Assembly (NCBI RefSeq): GCF_001194135.2
Contig: NC_068983.1
Location: forward strand, 100,095,998 to 100,159,997
Source: Octopus bimaculoides
Lineage: Eukaryota
Length of the DNA: 64,000 nucleotides
Direction: 5' to 3'
Part shown: one piece after another, positions 47,950 to 48,230 of the stretch
Numbering within the stretch: the first letter of the stretch is position 1
Layout of the letters: every line of letters begins with the position of its first letter
Position numbers and translations under genes: made by a program
Notes under the pieces: model-generated
Seen by the model: the letters and a program-made list of their open reading frames with translations, nothing else
Told to the model about the DNA's origin: nothing
Databases searched by the model: none

Positions 47950-48230
47950 TTCGTCGAGCGACCGATACCGGAACGAGCGGGCAACGGGTTGTGCGATCGC
48001 CAGCGAGGCGATTTTCCGATGCCCGGTCGAGTAGTAGGGCACCGCAGCGAGCATGGAAGCTGCGGGTGTGATCCTAGGGTGAAACCGACCGCGGGTGCGC
48101 ATCTCGGTGACAGTAGCAAATATTCGAACGAGACCTTCGAAGACCGAAACGGAGAAGGGTACCGTGCCAACGCTAGTCGAGCACGGGTCAGTCGGTCCTA
48201 AGAATCAGATGAAAACTTCCGGTCCCGACG
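47950..48230 (+). rRNA. Dispersed 28S rRNA fragment (pseudogene), core just 5' of and into expansion segment D7a
   Basis: GGTGCGCATCTCGGTGACAGTAGCAAATATTCGAACGAG...GGAGAAGGGT...GGGTCAGTCGGTCCTAAG matches the conserved LSU core; flanked by CCACTCC direct repeats. Confidence 0.88.

What the first reader, a model, noticed from the sequence alone, without database searches (positions are those of the whole stretch)
47950..48230. 28S rRNA fragment whose 3' end falls at the protostome hidden-break region, with a possible TSD
Seen: ~280 bp of LSU core ending just after GTCGGTCCTAAG, flanked by CCACTCC (47943-47949, 48231-48237). Known: most protostomes cleave 28S into alpha and beta halves in expansion segment D7a, immediately downstream of that motif. 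Inference: a LINE RT primed on the free 3' end of processed 28S-alpha and made a 5'-truncated copy, so the genome records the break position. If many copies share this end, it would be a 28S-alpha-derived retroposon family. A 17-bp near-repeat of the 3' junction (CTTCCGGTCCYGAYGCC) also occurs at ~47794, which might mean a different junction mechanism.
Basis: partly seen in the sequence, partly recalled or inferred. Interest (0 to 1): 0.7.

Follow-up and report, generated by a model that had tools for sequence, protein, structure and literature searches.

The report
Decayed 28S rRNA fragment in octopus DNA
A 266-base, mutated copy of part of the large ribosomal RNA sits in non-coding octopus DNA, stitched in among repeated copies of the local sequence; it is an ordinary ribosomal-RNA pseudogene fragment and does not show where the RNA is naturally cut.

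Summary
The 28S fragment is real. It spans window 47955-48220 (+), 87% identical to the 28S of an incirrate octopus (28S nt ~1774-2038: expansion segment D6, the conserved core, and the first 17 nt of D7a). It is decayed, mostly by G>A/C>T changes, and has no poly(A).

Its 3' end lies inside the published protostome hidden-break interval. However, it stops before a 20-nt stretch conserved in all four cephalopod rDNAs recovered, and before the variable AU-rich loop where a break would be expected.

The junction sits on a 5-7-nt microhomology (AGCTTCC) with local sequence. The proposed 7-bp TSD (CCACTCC) is at chance level and does not abut the fragment. It belongs to a ~35-nt local motif present in 3.5 copies. 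These copies alternate with three inserts: 94 nt of unknown origin, the rRNA piece, and 24 nt plus an inverted 25-nt copy of a sequence 1.6 kb upstream.

Best reading: a one-off, tailless, doubly truncated rRNA-derived insertion made by template-switching synthesis at a break or nick. This could be LINE reverse transcriptase or repair polymerase. Its end was set by microhomology, not by the 28S-alpha terminus.

A 2026 preprint places the octopus-specific 28S break in helix 88, elsewhere in the molecule. The retroposon-family idea could not be tested. Low interest.

The parts
47955..48220 (+). 28S rRNA-derived fragment (D6 expansion segment, conserved core, first 17 nt of D7a). Equals 28S nt ~1774-2038 of the incirrate-octopus contig L006.
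   Evidence: blastn 231/266 = 87%, 1 gap. 20 of 34 mismatches are G>A/C>T, 12 of them at CpG. It shares cephalopod-specific compensated variants such as TTCGAACGAGACCTTCGAA and CCGTGCC...GCACGG. There is no significant homology beyond either end.
48031..48203 (+). Conserved LSU core within the fragment (Rfam model positions ~1385-1549), ending in GUCGGUCCUAAG.
   Evidence: cmscan alignment with posterior probabilities mostly '*'.
48148..48167 (+). Homologue of hidden-break marker 1 of Natsidis et al. (AGUGGAGAAGGGUUCCAUGU); here AACGGAGAAGGGTACCGTGC.
   Evidence: Marker sequence from PMC6925239. Positions in the rDNA loci. Marker 2 is absent from the window copy.
47795..47829 (+). DR1: first, contiguous copy of the local ~35-nt motif (CTTCCGGTCCTGATGCC-T-CCCTTCACTCCTCTATA). 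It is preceded by AG, so AGCTTCC matches the rRNA's AGCTTCC.
47830..47923 (+). 94 nt of unknown origin between DR1 and DR*.
   Evidence: No match elsewhere in the window, in the four rDNA loci or in L017.
47924..47954 (+). DR*: degenerate third copy of the motif (GGTCACGGCGCTGGCCTCCCCACTCCTTCGT), directly abutting the rRNA 5' end.
   Evidence: Local alignment to DR1 scores 24; 17 of 2000 dinucleotide shuffles reach it. Its GGCGCTGG equals the rRNA 8-mer that lies 2 nt upstream of the fragment start in L006, but homology further upstream is not significant.
48216..48232 (+). DR2a: second copy of the 17-mer (CTTCCGGTCCCGACGCC). Its first 5 nt are also the last 5 nt of the rRNA homology, forming the microhomology junction.
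48233..48256 (+). 24-nt filler of unknown origin.
   Evidence: Unique in the window.
48257..48281 (+). Inverted 25-nt copy (22/25) of window 46593-46617. It ends in CGA, which overlaps the motif's CGAC.
   Evidence: (I10) and 28: 0 expected by chance.
46593..46617 (-). Partner of the 25-nt inverted match, 28 nt upstream of the detectable 5' end of a RidA processed pseudogene.
48287..48303 (+). DR2b: second copy of the motif's 3' half (CCCTTCACTCCTCCACA), separated from DR2a by 54 nt.

Best explanation
This is a single, non-functional, decayed copy of an internal 266-nt piece of the host lineage's own 28S rRNA. It was inserted into non-coding DNA about 230 bp downstream of a promoter-like repeat unit in an octopus genome.

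It was made by templated synthesis that switched templates several times at a chromosomal nick or break. The growing strand alternated between the local target sequence (copied 3.5 times) and foreign templates. Those templates were an unidentified 94-nt source, 28S rRNA or rDNA, and a 25-nt stretch 1.6 kb away on the opposite strand.

The 3' limit of the rRNA piece was set by annealing of the target to a 5-7-nt match (AGCUUCC) near the base of expansion segment D7a. It was not set by the physical 3' end of a processed 28S-alpha half.

In kind, it is a 'tailless', 5'- and 3'-truncated rRNA retropseudogene or templated insertion. Whether the polymerase was a LINE reverse transcriptase (TPRT with internal priming and template jumps) or a repair polymerase cannot be decided from this one locus.

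Shown: the identity, extent, decay and orientation of the fragment; the repeated local motif; the inverted 25-mer; and the sequence identities at the junctions. Inferred: an RNA rather than rDNA template, the order of events, and the enzyme.
For: The host lineage is incirrate octopus. The best-matching rDNA carries the Incirrata-specific H88 motif TATG/CGTC (PMC13321053). An Argonauta hians protein is among the hits. The window shares repeat families at 86-93% identity with O. sinensis.

Decay is dominated by GC>AT transitions. There is no A-tail and no further rDNA.

Junction evidence: all cephalopod rDNAs continue with (A/C)CGAAAGGCGCCGGATCCGT, where the window switches to GGTCCCGACGCC. The same CTTCCGGTCCYGAYGCC occurs 421 bp upstream, preceded by AG.

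The motif copies DR1, DR*, DR2a and DR2b are supported. The inverted 25-mer has zero chance expectation.

DR1 and DR2 differ at 4 of 34 positions, all C/T (12%). This is similar to the 13% divergence of the rRNA piece from L006, so the repeats and the insert are of comparable age.

Precedent exists. Tailless retropseudogenes include ten 5'-truncated 28S cases in human, have TSDs of 8-35 nt, and show target-template complementarity at the priming site (PMC5322556). 28S/LINE-1 chimeric insertions have a median 28S segment of 269 nt (PMC13174262).
Against: The host species' own rDNA was not available. L006 is the closest relative found, of unknown species, so the exact 3' limit rests on conservation among four cephalopod rDNAs.

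After 6 mismatched bases, the window's GACGCC...TCC lines up in register with the rRNA's GGCGCC..ATCC. A scrambled continuation of rRNA homology to ~48237 therefore cannot be excluded.

The sources of the 94-nt and 24-nt pieces were not found, so the 'template switch' origin is inferred for them.

DR1's AGCTTCC could itself be a later copy of the rRNA/DR2 junction rather than pre-existing target sequence.

Three and a half copies of a target is unusual for simple TPRT. A DNA-level origin from rDNA cannot be excluded, because rRNA has no intron or poly(A) to mark an RNA intermediate.
Confidence: 0.55

Rival explanations
1. A LINE reverse transcriptase primed on the free 3' end of processed 28S-alpha and made a 5'-truncated copy flanked by a 7-bp TSD (CCACTCC). 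The 3' end would then record the hidden-break position and could mark a 28S-alpha-derived retroposon family.
For: The 3' end lies inside the hidden-break interval defined by the two conserved markers. Molluscs in general have the break (PMC6925239; PMC9547907). Logan contigs of one cephalopod-type rDNA (L012-L016) start inside the variable D7a loop, as expected if coverage drops there. LINE remnants and a poly(A)-type processed pseudogene nearby show that retroposition occurred in this region.
Against: The copy lacks the 20 conserved nucleotides that precede the variable loop. The junction is a microhomology with a duplicated local sequence. CCACTCC is at chance level, not adjacent, and part of a larger repeated motif. 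There is only one copy in 64 kb, and none in 49 kb of O. sinensis. The break mapped in O. bimaculoides is at H88, about 2 kb further 3'.
Confidence: 0.08
2. DNA-level 'orphon'. A piece of rDNA (chromosomal or extrachromosomal) was captured at a double-strand break or copied by replication-based template switching (MMBIR/FoSTeS), without an RNA intermediate.
For: The patchwork of repeated local sequence and an inverted copy from 1.6 kb away is typical of DNA-templated switching. Nothing in the fragment demands an RNA template: there is no tail and no processing mark.
Against: rDNA arrays would have to act in trans. Both ends of the piece lie at the bases of surface-exposed expansion segments (D6 and D7a) of the mature rRNA, which fits an abundant RNA template at least as well. 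No spacer (ITS/IGS) sequence is attached.
Confidence: 0.25
3. Chimeric retrocopy. Reverse transcription of a RidA mRNA jumped onto 28S rRNA at the mRNA's 5' end. A later 1.6-kb inversion with a staggered break (duplicating the 25-mer) separated the rRNA part from the RidA pseudogene at 46143-46565 (-).
For: The 25-nt inverted match links the two places. Undoing the inversion would put the rRNA piece, 36 nt, the 25-mer and the RidA pseudogene in one orientation. The two have similar divergence: 87% for the rRNA piece against 82-91% for the RidA exons.
Against: The sequence between the rRNA and RidA exon 2 shows no significant similarity to the O. sinensis RidA exon 1, 5'UTR, 10 kb upstream or intron 1. 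The inversion would make the collinear 17-mer plus 17-mer repeat (DR1 against DR2a and DR2b) a coincidence, which the chance estimates do not allow.
Confidence: 0.04

Closest known systems
Tailless retropseudogenes (Schmitz et al. 2004; Noll et al. 2015, PMC5322556)
   Same: A copy of an abundant non-polyadenylated RNA with no oligo(A). It is 3'-truncated at an internal position and flanked by duplicated target. A short complementarity between target and template lies at the 3' junction. 5'-truncated 28S examples are described in human.
   Different: Here the target sequence is present 3.5 times with extra inserts between the copies. The host is a cephalopod, where the responsible LINE is unknown. 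No L1-type target motif is present.
28S rRNA retropseudogenes, LSU-rRNA fragments and 28S/LINE-1 chimeric insertions (Wang et al. 1997; PMC13174262)
   Same: A few-hundred-nt internal piece of 28S in sense orientation (median 269 nt in the human chimeras, against 266 nt here). It is interpreted there as template switching or RNA ligation during TPRT.
   Different: No LINE sequence is attached here. The neighbouring pieces are local sequence copies and unidentified filler.
Templated-insertion break repair (polymerase theta end joining, RNA-templated repair, MMBIR); from general knowledge
   Same: Several short patches copied from nearby sequence in direct and inverted orientation, with microhomology at the junctions.
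   Different: A 266-nt patch from a trans template is long for this mechanism. The enzyme cannot be inferred from sequence.
Protostome 28S hidden break in D7a (Natsidis et al. 2019, PMC6925239) and the octopus H88 break (Mitra et al. 2026 preprint, PMC13321053)
   Same: The fragment's 3' end lies between the two markers that bracket the canonical break region.
   Different: It ends in the conserved proximal part, not in the variable AU-rich loop. The break documented for octopus is in helix 88, about 2 kb downstream.
SINEs derived from 28S rRNA (cited in PMC13174262 as a known SINE source)
   Same: 28S-derived sequence dispersed in a genome.
   Different: No sign of a family, a LINE-derived tail or a promoter. 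There is a single decayed copy in the data available.

Membership tests
Eukaryotic LSU (28S) rRNA-derived sequence | Sequence and structure match to the LSU model or to real rDNA | tested here: met
   RF02543 E=3e-4, below the gathering score because the piece is short. 87% identity over 266 nt to octopus 28S.
Functional rRNA gene | Complete 28S within an rDNA unit, with core positions intact | tested here: not met
   Only 266 nt are present. Universally conserved core bases are changed (GGTAG>GACAG, AAGTGG>AAACGG) where four cephalopod rDNAs are identical. There is no other rDNA in the window.
LINE-mediated retropseudogene (TPRT), tailless type | Target-site duplication directly flanking the insert | tested here: inconclusive
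   Copies of one local motif abut both ends (DR* at 5', DR2a at 3'), and a further copy lies 94 nt upstream. There are 3.5 copies rather than 2, and DR2 is interrupted by 54 nt.
LINE-mediated retropseudogene (TPRT), tailless type | No oligo(A), with short target-template complementarity at the 3' junction | tested here: met
   There is no A-run at 48205-48240. AGCTTCC is shared by the rRNA and the duplicated target.
LINE-mediated retropseudogene (TPRT), tailless type | RNA intermediate (processed template) | not testable with these tools
   rRNA has no intron or poly(A) to mark an RNA intermediate. The absence of spacer sequence is compatible with an RNA or a DNA source.
   The end is inside the marker-defined interval but 20 nt or more short of the variable loop. 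The true alpha end in octopus is unmapped in the literature reached.
   One copy in 64 kb and none in 49 kb of O. sinensis. The host genome could not be reached.
   It is not adjacent to the fragment ends. Chance frequency is 4.9% for random intervals and 17% for composition-matched shuffles.
DNA transposon or MITE carrying the fragment | Terminal inverted repeats at the ends, flanked by a TSD, and multiple copies | tested here: not met
   The 25-nt inverted pair has no flanking duplication and no other copy in the window.

The most novel reading that the evidence does not exclude
The insertion is a roughly 10%-diverged fossil of a time when octopod 28S was still cut in D7a. The reverse transcriptase engaged the trimmed 3' end region of 28S-alpha. 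A genome-wide pile-up of such fragment ends would then map an ancestral canonical break in a lineage now known for a different break, at H88.
Probability: 0.07. Interest if true: 0.55.

Novelty: new member of a known kind. Interest (0 to 1): 0.22.

Why it matters
By itself it matters little. Dispersed rRNA pseudogene fragments are known in animals, and this one is decayed and single.

Two things give it modest value. First, it is a clear worked example, in a cephalopod, of an rRNA-derived insertion whose junctions show microhomology and repeated re-copying of the target. This bears on how non-polyadenylated RNAs get into genomes where the active LINEs are not L1.

Second, a genome-wide tabulation of such fragment ends is still a sensible, cheap way to ask whether rRNA processing sites leave genomic footprints. 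That is timely given the 2026 report of an unusual 28S break in octopus. This single locus does not answer that question.

Tried and rejected
(1) Rfam at gathering thresholds over the whole window found nothing. The fragment appears only with the E-value threshold.

(2) Extending the rRNA homology upstream or downstream gave local-alignment scores no better than shuffles. GGCGCTGG at 47930 matches the rRNA 8-mer in the right neighbourhood, but it sits inside the degenerate motif copy DR*. I treat it as coincidence or junction microhomology.

(3) The 'chimeric 28S + RidA retrocopy split by an inversion' idea was rejected. I found no similarity to the O. sinensis RidA exon 1, UTR or intron 1, and it conflicts with the collinear repeat.

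(4) A second, inverted RidA copy after the fragment was considered. Only an 11-mer supports it, at chance level.

(5) TIR transposon (46593...48281): there is no TSD and no other copies.

(6) LTR element, with units A and D as LTRs: these are only 70-79% identical and D is truncated. That is far more diverged than the rRNA insert.

(7) Sources for the 94-nt and 24-nt pieces were not found in the window, the rDNA loci or L017.

(8) Look-ups of window ORFs, to find the host assembly or other copies, found nothing on record.

(9) Secondary structure at the D7a base was unresolved. The single-sequence fold is no better than shuffles and the four-sequence consensus shows no covariation. I therefore make no claim that the junction lies in a loop.

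(10) The supplements of Natsidis et al. list no cephalopods. The octopus preprint and its supplement do not state whether the canonical gap persists.

Full report
**What is there.** Window 47955-48220 (+) is a copy of an internal piece of eukaryotic large-subunit rRNA.

- Rfam finds nothing at gathering thresholds. A permissive scan of 47000-49000 gives LSU_rRNA_eukarya at E=3e-4, with a high-confidence core at about 48031-48203 ending in GUCGGUCCUAAG.
- The copy carries paired, structure-preserving differences from the general eukaryotic consensus (UUCGAACGAGACCUUCGAA; CCGUGCC...GCACGG). It therefore derives from a functional but lineage-specific rRNA.

**Finding the source lineage.**

- No nucleotide database of eukaryotes was available. 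I translated the spurious ORF running through the fragment and searched the protein collection.
- That led to Tara Oceans rDNA contigs with the same unusual variants.
- A second search, with a neighbouring spurious ORF from those contigs, hit a 'hypothetical protein' of Argonauta hians and several Logan assemblies. Their contigs were fetched.
- The best match is L006-L009: window 47955-48220 = L006 2618-2882, 231/266 identical with one gap.
- L006 holds a complete 28S (845-5751). It carries TATGCGTC, the break-site sequence that Mitra et al. (2026 preprint, PMC13321053) report as conserved in incirrate octopuses.
- The window shares interspersed repeats at 86-93% identity with an O. sinensis chromosome segment.
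- The window is therefore octopod, and the fragment comes from the host lineage's own 28S. It covers nt ~1774-2038: expansion segment D6, the conserved core, and the first 17 nt of D7a.

**State of the copy.**

- Of the 34 mismatches to L006, 20 are G>A or C>T and 12 sit in CpG.
- In the core, the four cephalopod rDNAs are identical to one another, yet the window differs at about 8% of positions, including universally conserved bases.
- It is a decaying pseudogene, not a variant gene.
- No other rDNA-derived sequence exists in the 64 kb or in 49 kb of O. sinensis.

**The ends.**

- Neither flank shows significant similarity to the rDNA that adjoins the fragment in L006.
- At the 3' end the window reads ...CCTAAGAATCAGATGAAAACTTCC|GGTCCCGACGCC. 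L006 reads ...CCTAAGAAGCGGGCGAAAGCTTCC|ACGAAAGGCGCCGGATCCGT, followed by a variable, A/U-rich stretch.
- The 20 nt after the junction are near-identical in all four cephalopod rDNAs, so the host almost certainly has them too.
- Natsidis et al. (PMC6925239) delimit the protostome hidden-break region by two conserved 20-mers. In L006 these lie 144 nt apart. The fragment ends 53 nt after the first and 91 nt before the second.
But the copy stops in the conserved proximal part, before the variable loop in which breaks are described.
- Indirect support that the loop is the break site in at least one cephalopod-type rDNA: five of six Logan contigs retrieved for one cluster begin inside that loop.

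**The flanks.**

- The proposed TSD, CCACTCC, is at the stated coordinates. It lies 5 and 10 nt away from the fragment ends. A shared 7-mer in 30-nt flanks is found for 4.9% of random intervals in this window, and in 17% of shuffles of the real, C-rich flanks.
- The informative repeat is larger.
  - CTTCCGGTCCYGAYGCC occurs at 47795 and 48216.
  - CCCTTCACTCCTCYAYA occurs at 47813 and 48287.
  - Both are unique in the window with zero chance expectation.
- In the first copy (DR1, 47795-47829) the two blocks are contiguous. In the second they are split by 54 nt.
- A third, degenerate copy (DR*, 47924-47954) abuts the 5' end of the rRNA piece; 17 of 2000 shuffles reach its score.
- The 54-nt interruption consists of 24 nt of unknown origin, a 25-nt inverted copy (22/25) of window 46593-46617, and 5 further nt.
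- The layout is: DR1 - 94 nt unknown - DR* - rRNA - DR2a - 24 nt + inverted 25-mer - DR2b.
- Sequence identities sit at the junctions. AGCTTCC is shared by the rRNA's last bases and the bases at the start of DR1. CGA lies between the 25-mer and DR2b. GAG lies between the flank-like end of DR* and the rRNA 5' end.
- DR1 and DR2 differ by four C/T transitions in 34 positions. That is about the same divergence as the rRNA piece from its source, so the repeats and the insert are of similar age.

**Interpretation.**

- The pattern shows a target sequence re-copied several times, alternating with foreign patches, joined at microhomologies, with no A-tail. This points to synthesis with repeated template switching at a nick or break.
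- The closest described class is the tailless retropseudogene. These are LINE-dependent, 3'-truncated at internal positions, have TSDs of 8-35 nt, and show target-template complementarity at the priming site. Ten 5'-truncated 28S cases are reported in human (PMC5322556).
- 28S/LINE-1 chimeras with a median 269-nt 28S segment are also ascribed to template switching (PMC13174262).
- Repair-polymerase templated insertion, or replication-based switching from rDNA, gives the same picture and cannot be excluded. I therefore commit to the mechanism class (microhomology-primed, template-switching copy of rRNA sequence) at about 0.55, and leave the enzyme open.
- Under any of these, the rRNA 3' limit is explained by the AGCUUCC match. 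It carries no information on the position of an RNA end.

**The hidden break in octopus.** The only mapped break I could find is at helix 88 (G4322/C4323 in O. bimaculoides), described as distinct from the protostome gap. Neither that text nor its supplement says whether the canonical gap persists. Natsidis et al. list no cephalopods in the supplements held. The premise that octopus has a 28S-alpha end in D7a is thus unverified.

**Context.**

- The fragment lies about 230 bp downstream of the end of a ~1-kb repeat unit (46754-47745). That unit ends in CCAAT boxes and TATATAA and occurs four times in the window in two orientations.
- A processed pseudogene of RidA lies at 46143-46565 (-). It consists of exons 2-6 of the O. 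sinensis gene joined without introns, with a frameshift, in-frame stops and an A-rich tail.
- The 25-nt inverted match starts 28 nt beyond its detectable 5' end. I tested whether rRNA and RidA once formed one chimeric retrocopy later split by an inversion. The intervening sequence has no similarity to the RidA first exon or locus, and the model would make the collinear repeat a coincidence. I rate it unlikely, and the 25-mer remains only partly explained.

**Verdict.** It is a truncated 28S-derived copy ending inside the break interval. It is not shown to be primed on a 28S-alpha end, the TSD is not real, and the family idea is untested. It is a new example of a known kind, of low interest on its own.

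Noticed in passing
window 46143-46565 (-), A-rich tail to ~46095: Processed pseudogene of RidA (2-iminobutanoate/2-iminopropanoate deaminase, L-PSP family). Exons 2-6 of the O. sinensis gene are contiguous at 82-91% identity, with in-frame stops and a frameshift. AATAAA and an A-rich tail follow. Exon 1 is not recognisable.
   Followed up: yes
window 46754-47745 (+), 48600-49803 (+), 45709-44923 (-), 43482-42523 (-): Four copies (65-80% identical) of a ~1-kb unit. Its conserved end has two CCAAT boxes (GCGCCAATACCAACCAATCAGAG) and TATATAA, followed by ~40 nt of shared sequence. It looks like a promoter, but no gene was identified downstream, and its nature (gene-family promoter or old repeat) is unknown.
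   Followed up: partly
window 48949-49510: A ~560-bp palindromic, MITE-like insertion inside repeat unit D, with 69-nt terminal inverted arms (48969-49037 / 49427-49495). Its centre consists of degenerate telomere-type TTAGGG repeats on one arm and CCCTAA on the other (49165-49350).
   Followed up: no
window 47772-47800: TGACGTGACGTCA (CRE-like) followed by two ETS-like CTTCC motifs (ACTTCCTC, CTTCCGG). These lie ~70-100 nt downstream of the TATA-like box, immediately at the start of DR1. The insertion site may be a promoter-proximal, possibly transcribed region.
   Followed up: no
window 35047-35436, 38064-38480, 7769-7860 and others: Copies of a SINE-like repeat (translations contain ...GGELAESLARRAKCLAVF.../...RPRRNLNSER...). 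From memory it resembles the abundant Octopus SINE. The window also has many N gaps and CA/GA/TA microsatellites, typical of a draft cephalopod assembly.
   Followed up: no
window 54334-54747 (+), 41813-42295 (+): ORFs that, by recollection of typical motifs, look like remnants of non-LTR retrotransposon proteins (...DRLYFPRKK...; ...KIKWPKANDAANYKKFDD...). Pfam gave no significant hit.
   Followed up: partly
L012-L016 (Logan contigs), against L011 348-567: Five short rDNA contigs from different sequencing runs all start 55-137 nt before hidden-break marker 2, inside the variable D7a loop of a cephalopod-type 28S. This is what a coverage drop at a canonical hidden break would give. The species is unknown.
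   Followed up: partly
L001 445-2792: The Tara Oceans cephalopod-type rDNA contig has an 18S of about 2.35 kb, much longer than the 1.83-kb model. This implies large expansion segments.
   Followed up: no
L006 4942-4949: The incirrate-specific H88 break motif TATG/CGTC reported in the 2026 preprint is present in L006-L009, at 28S nt ~4098-4105 of that contig's 28S. This supports the assignment of these Logan contigs to an incirrate octopus.
   Followed up: yes
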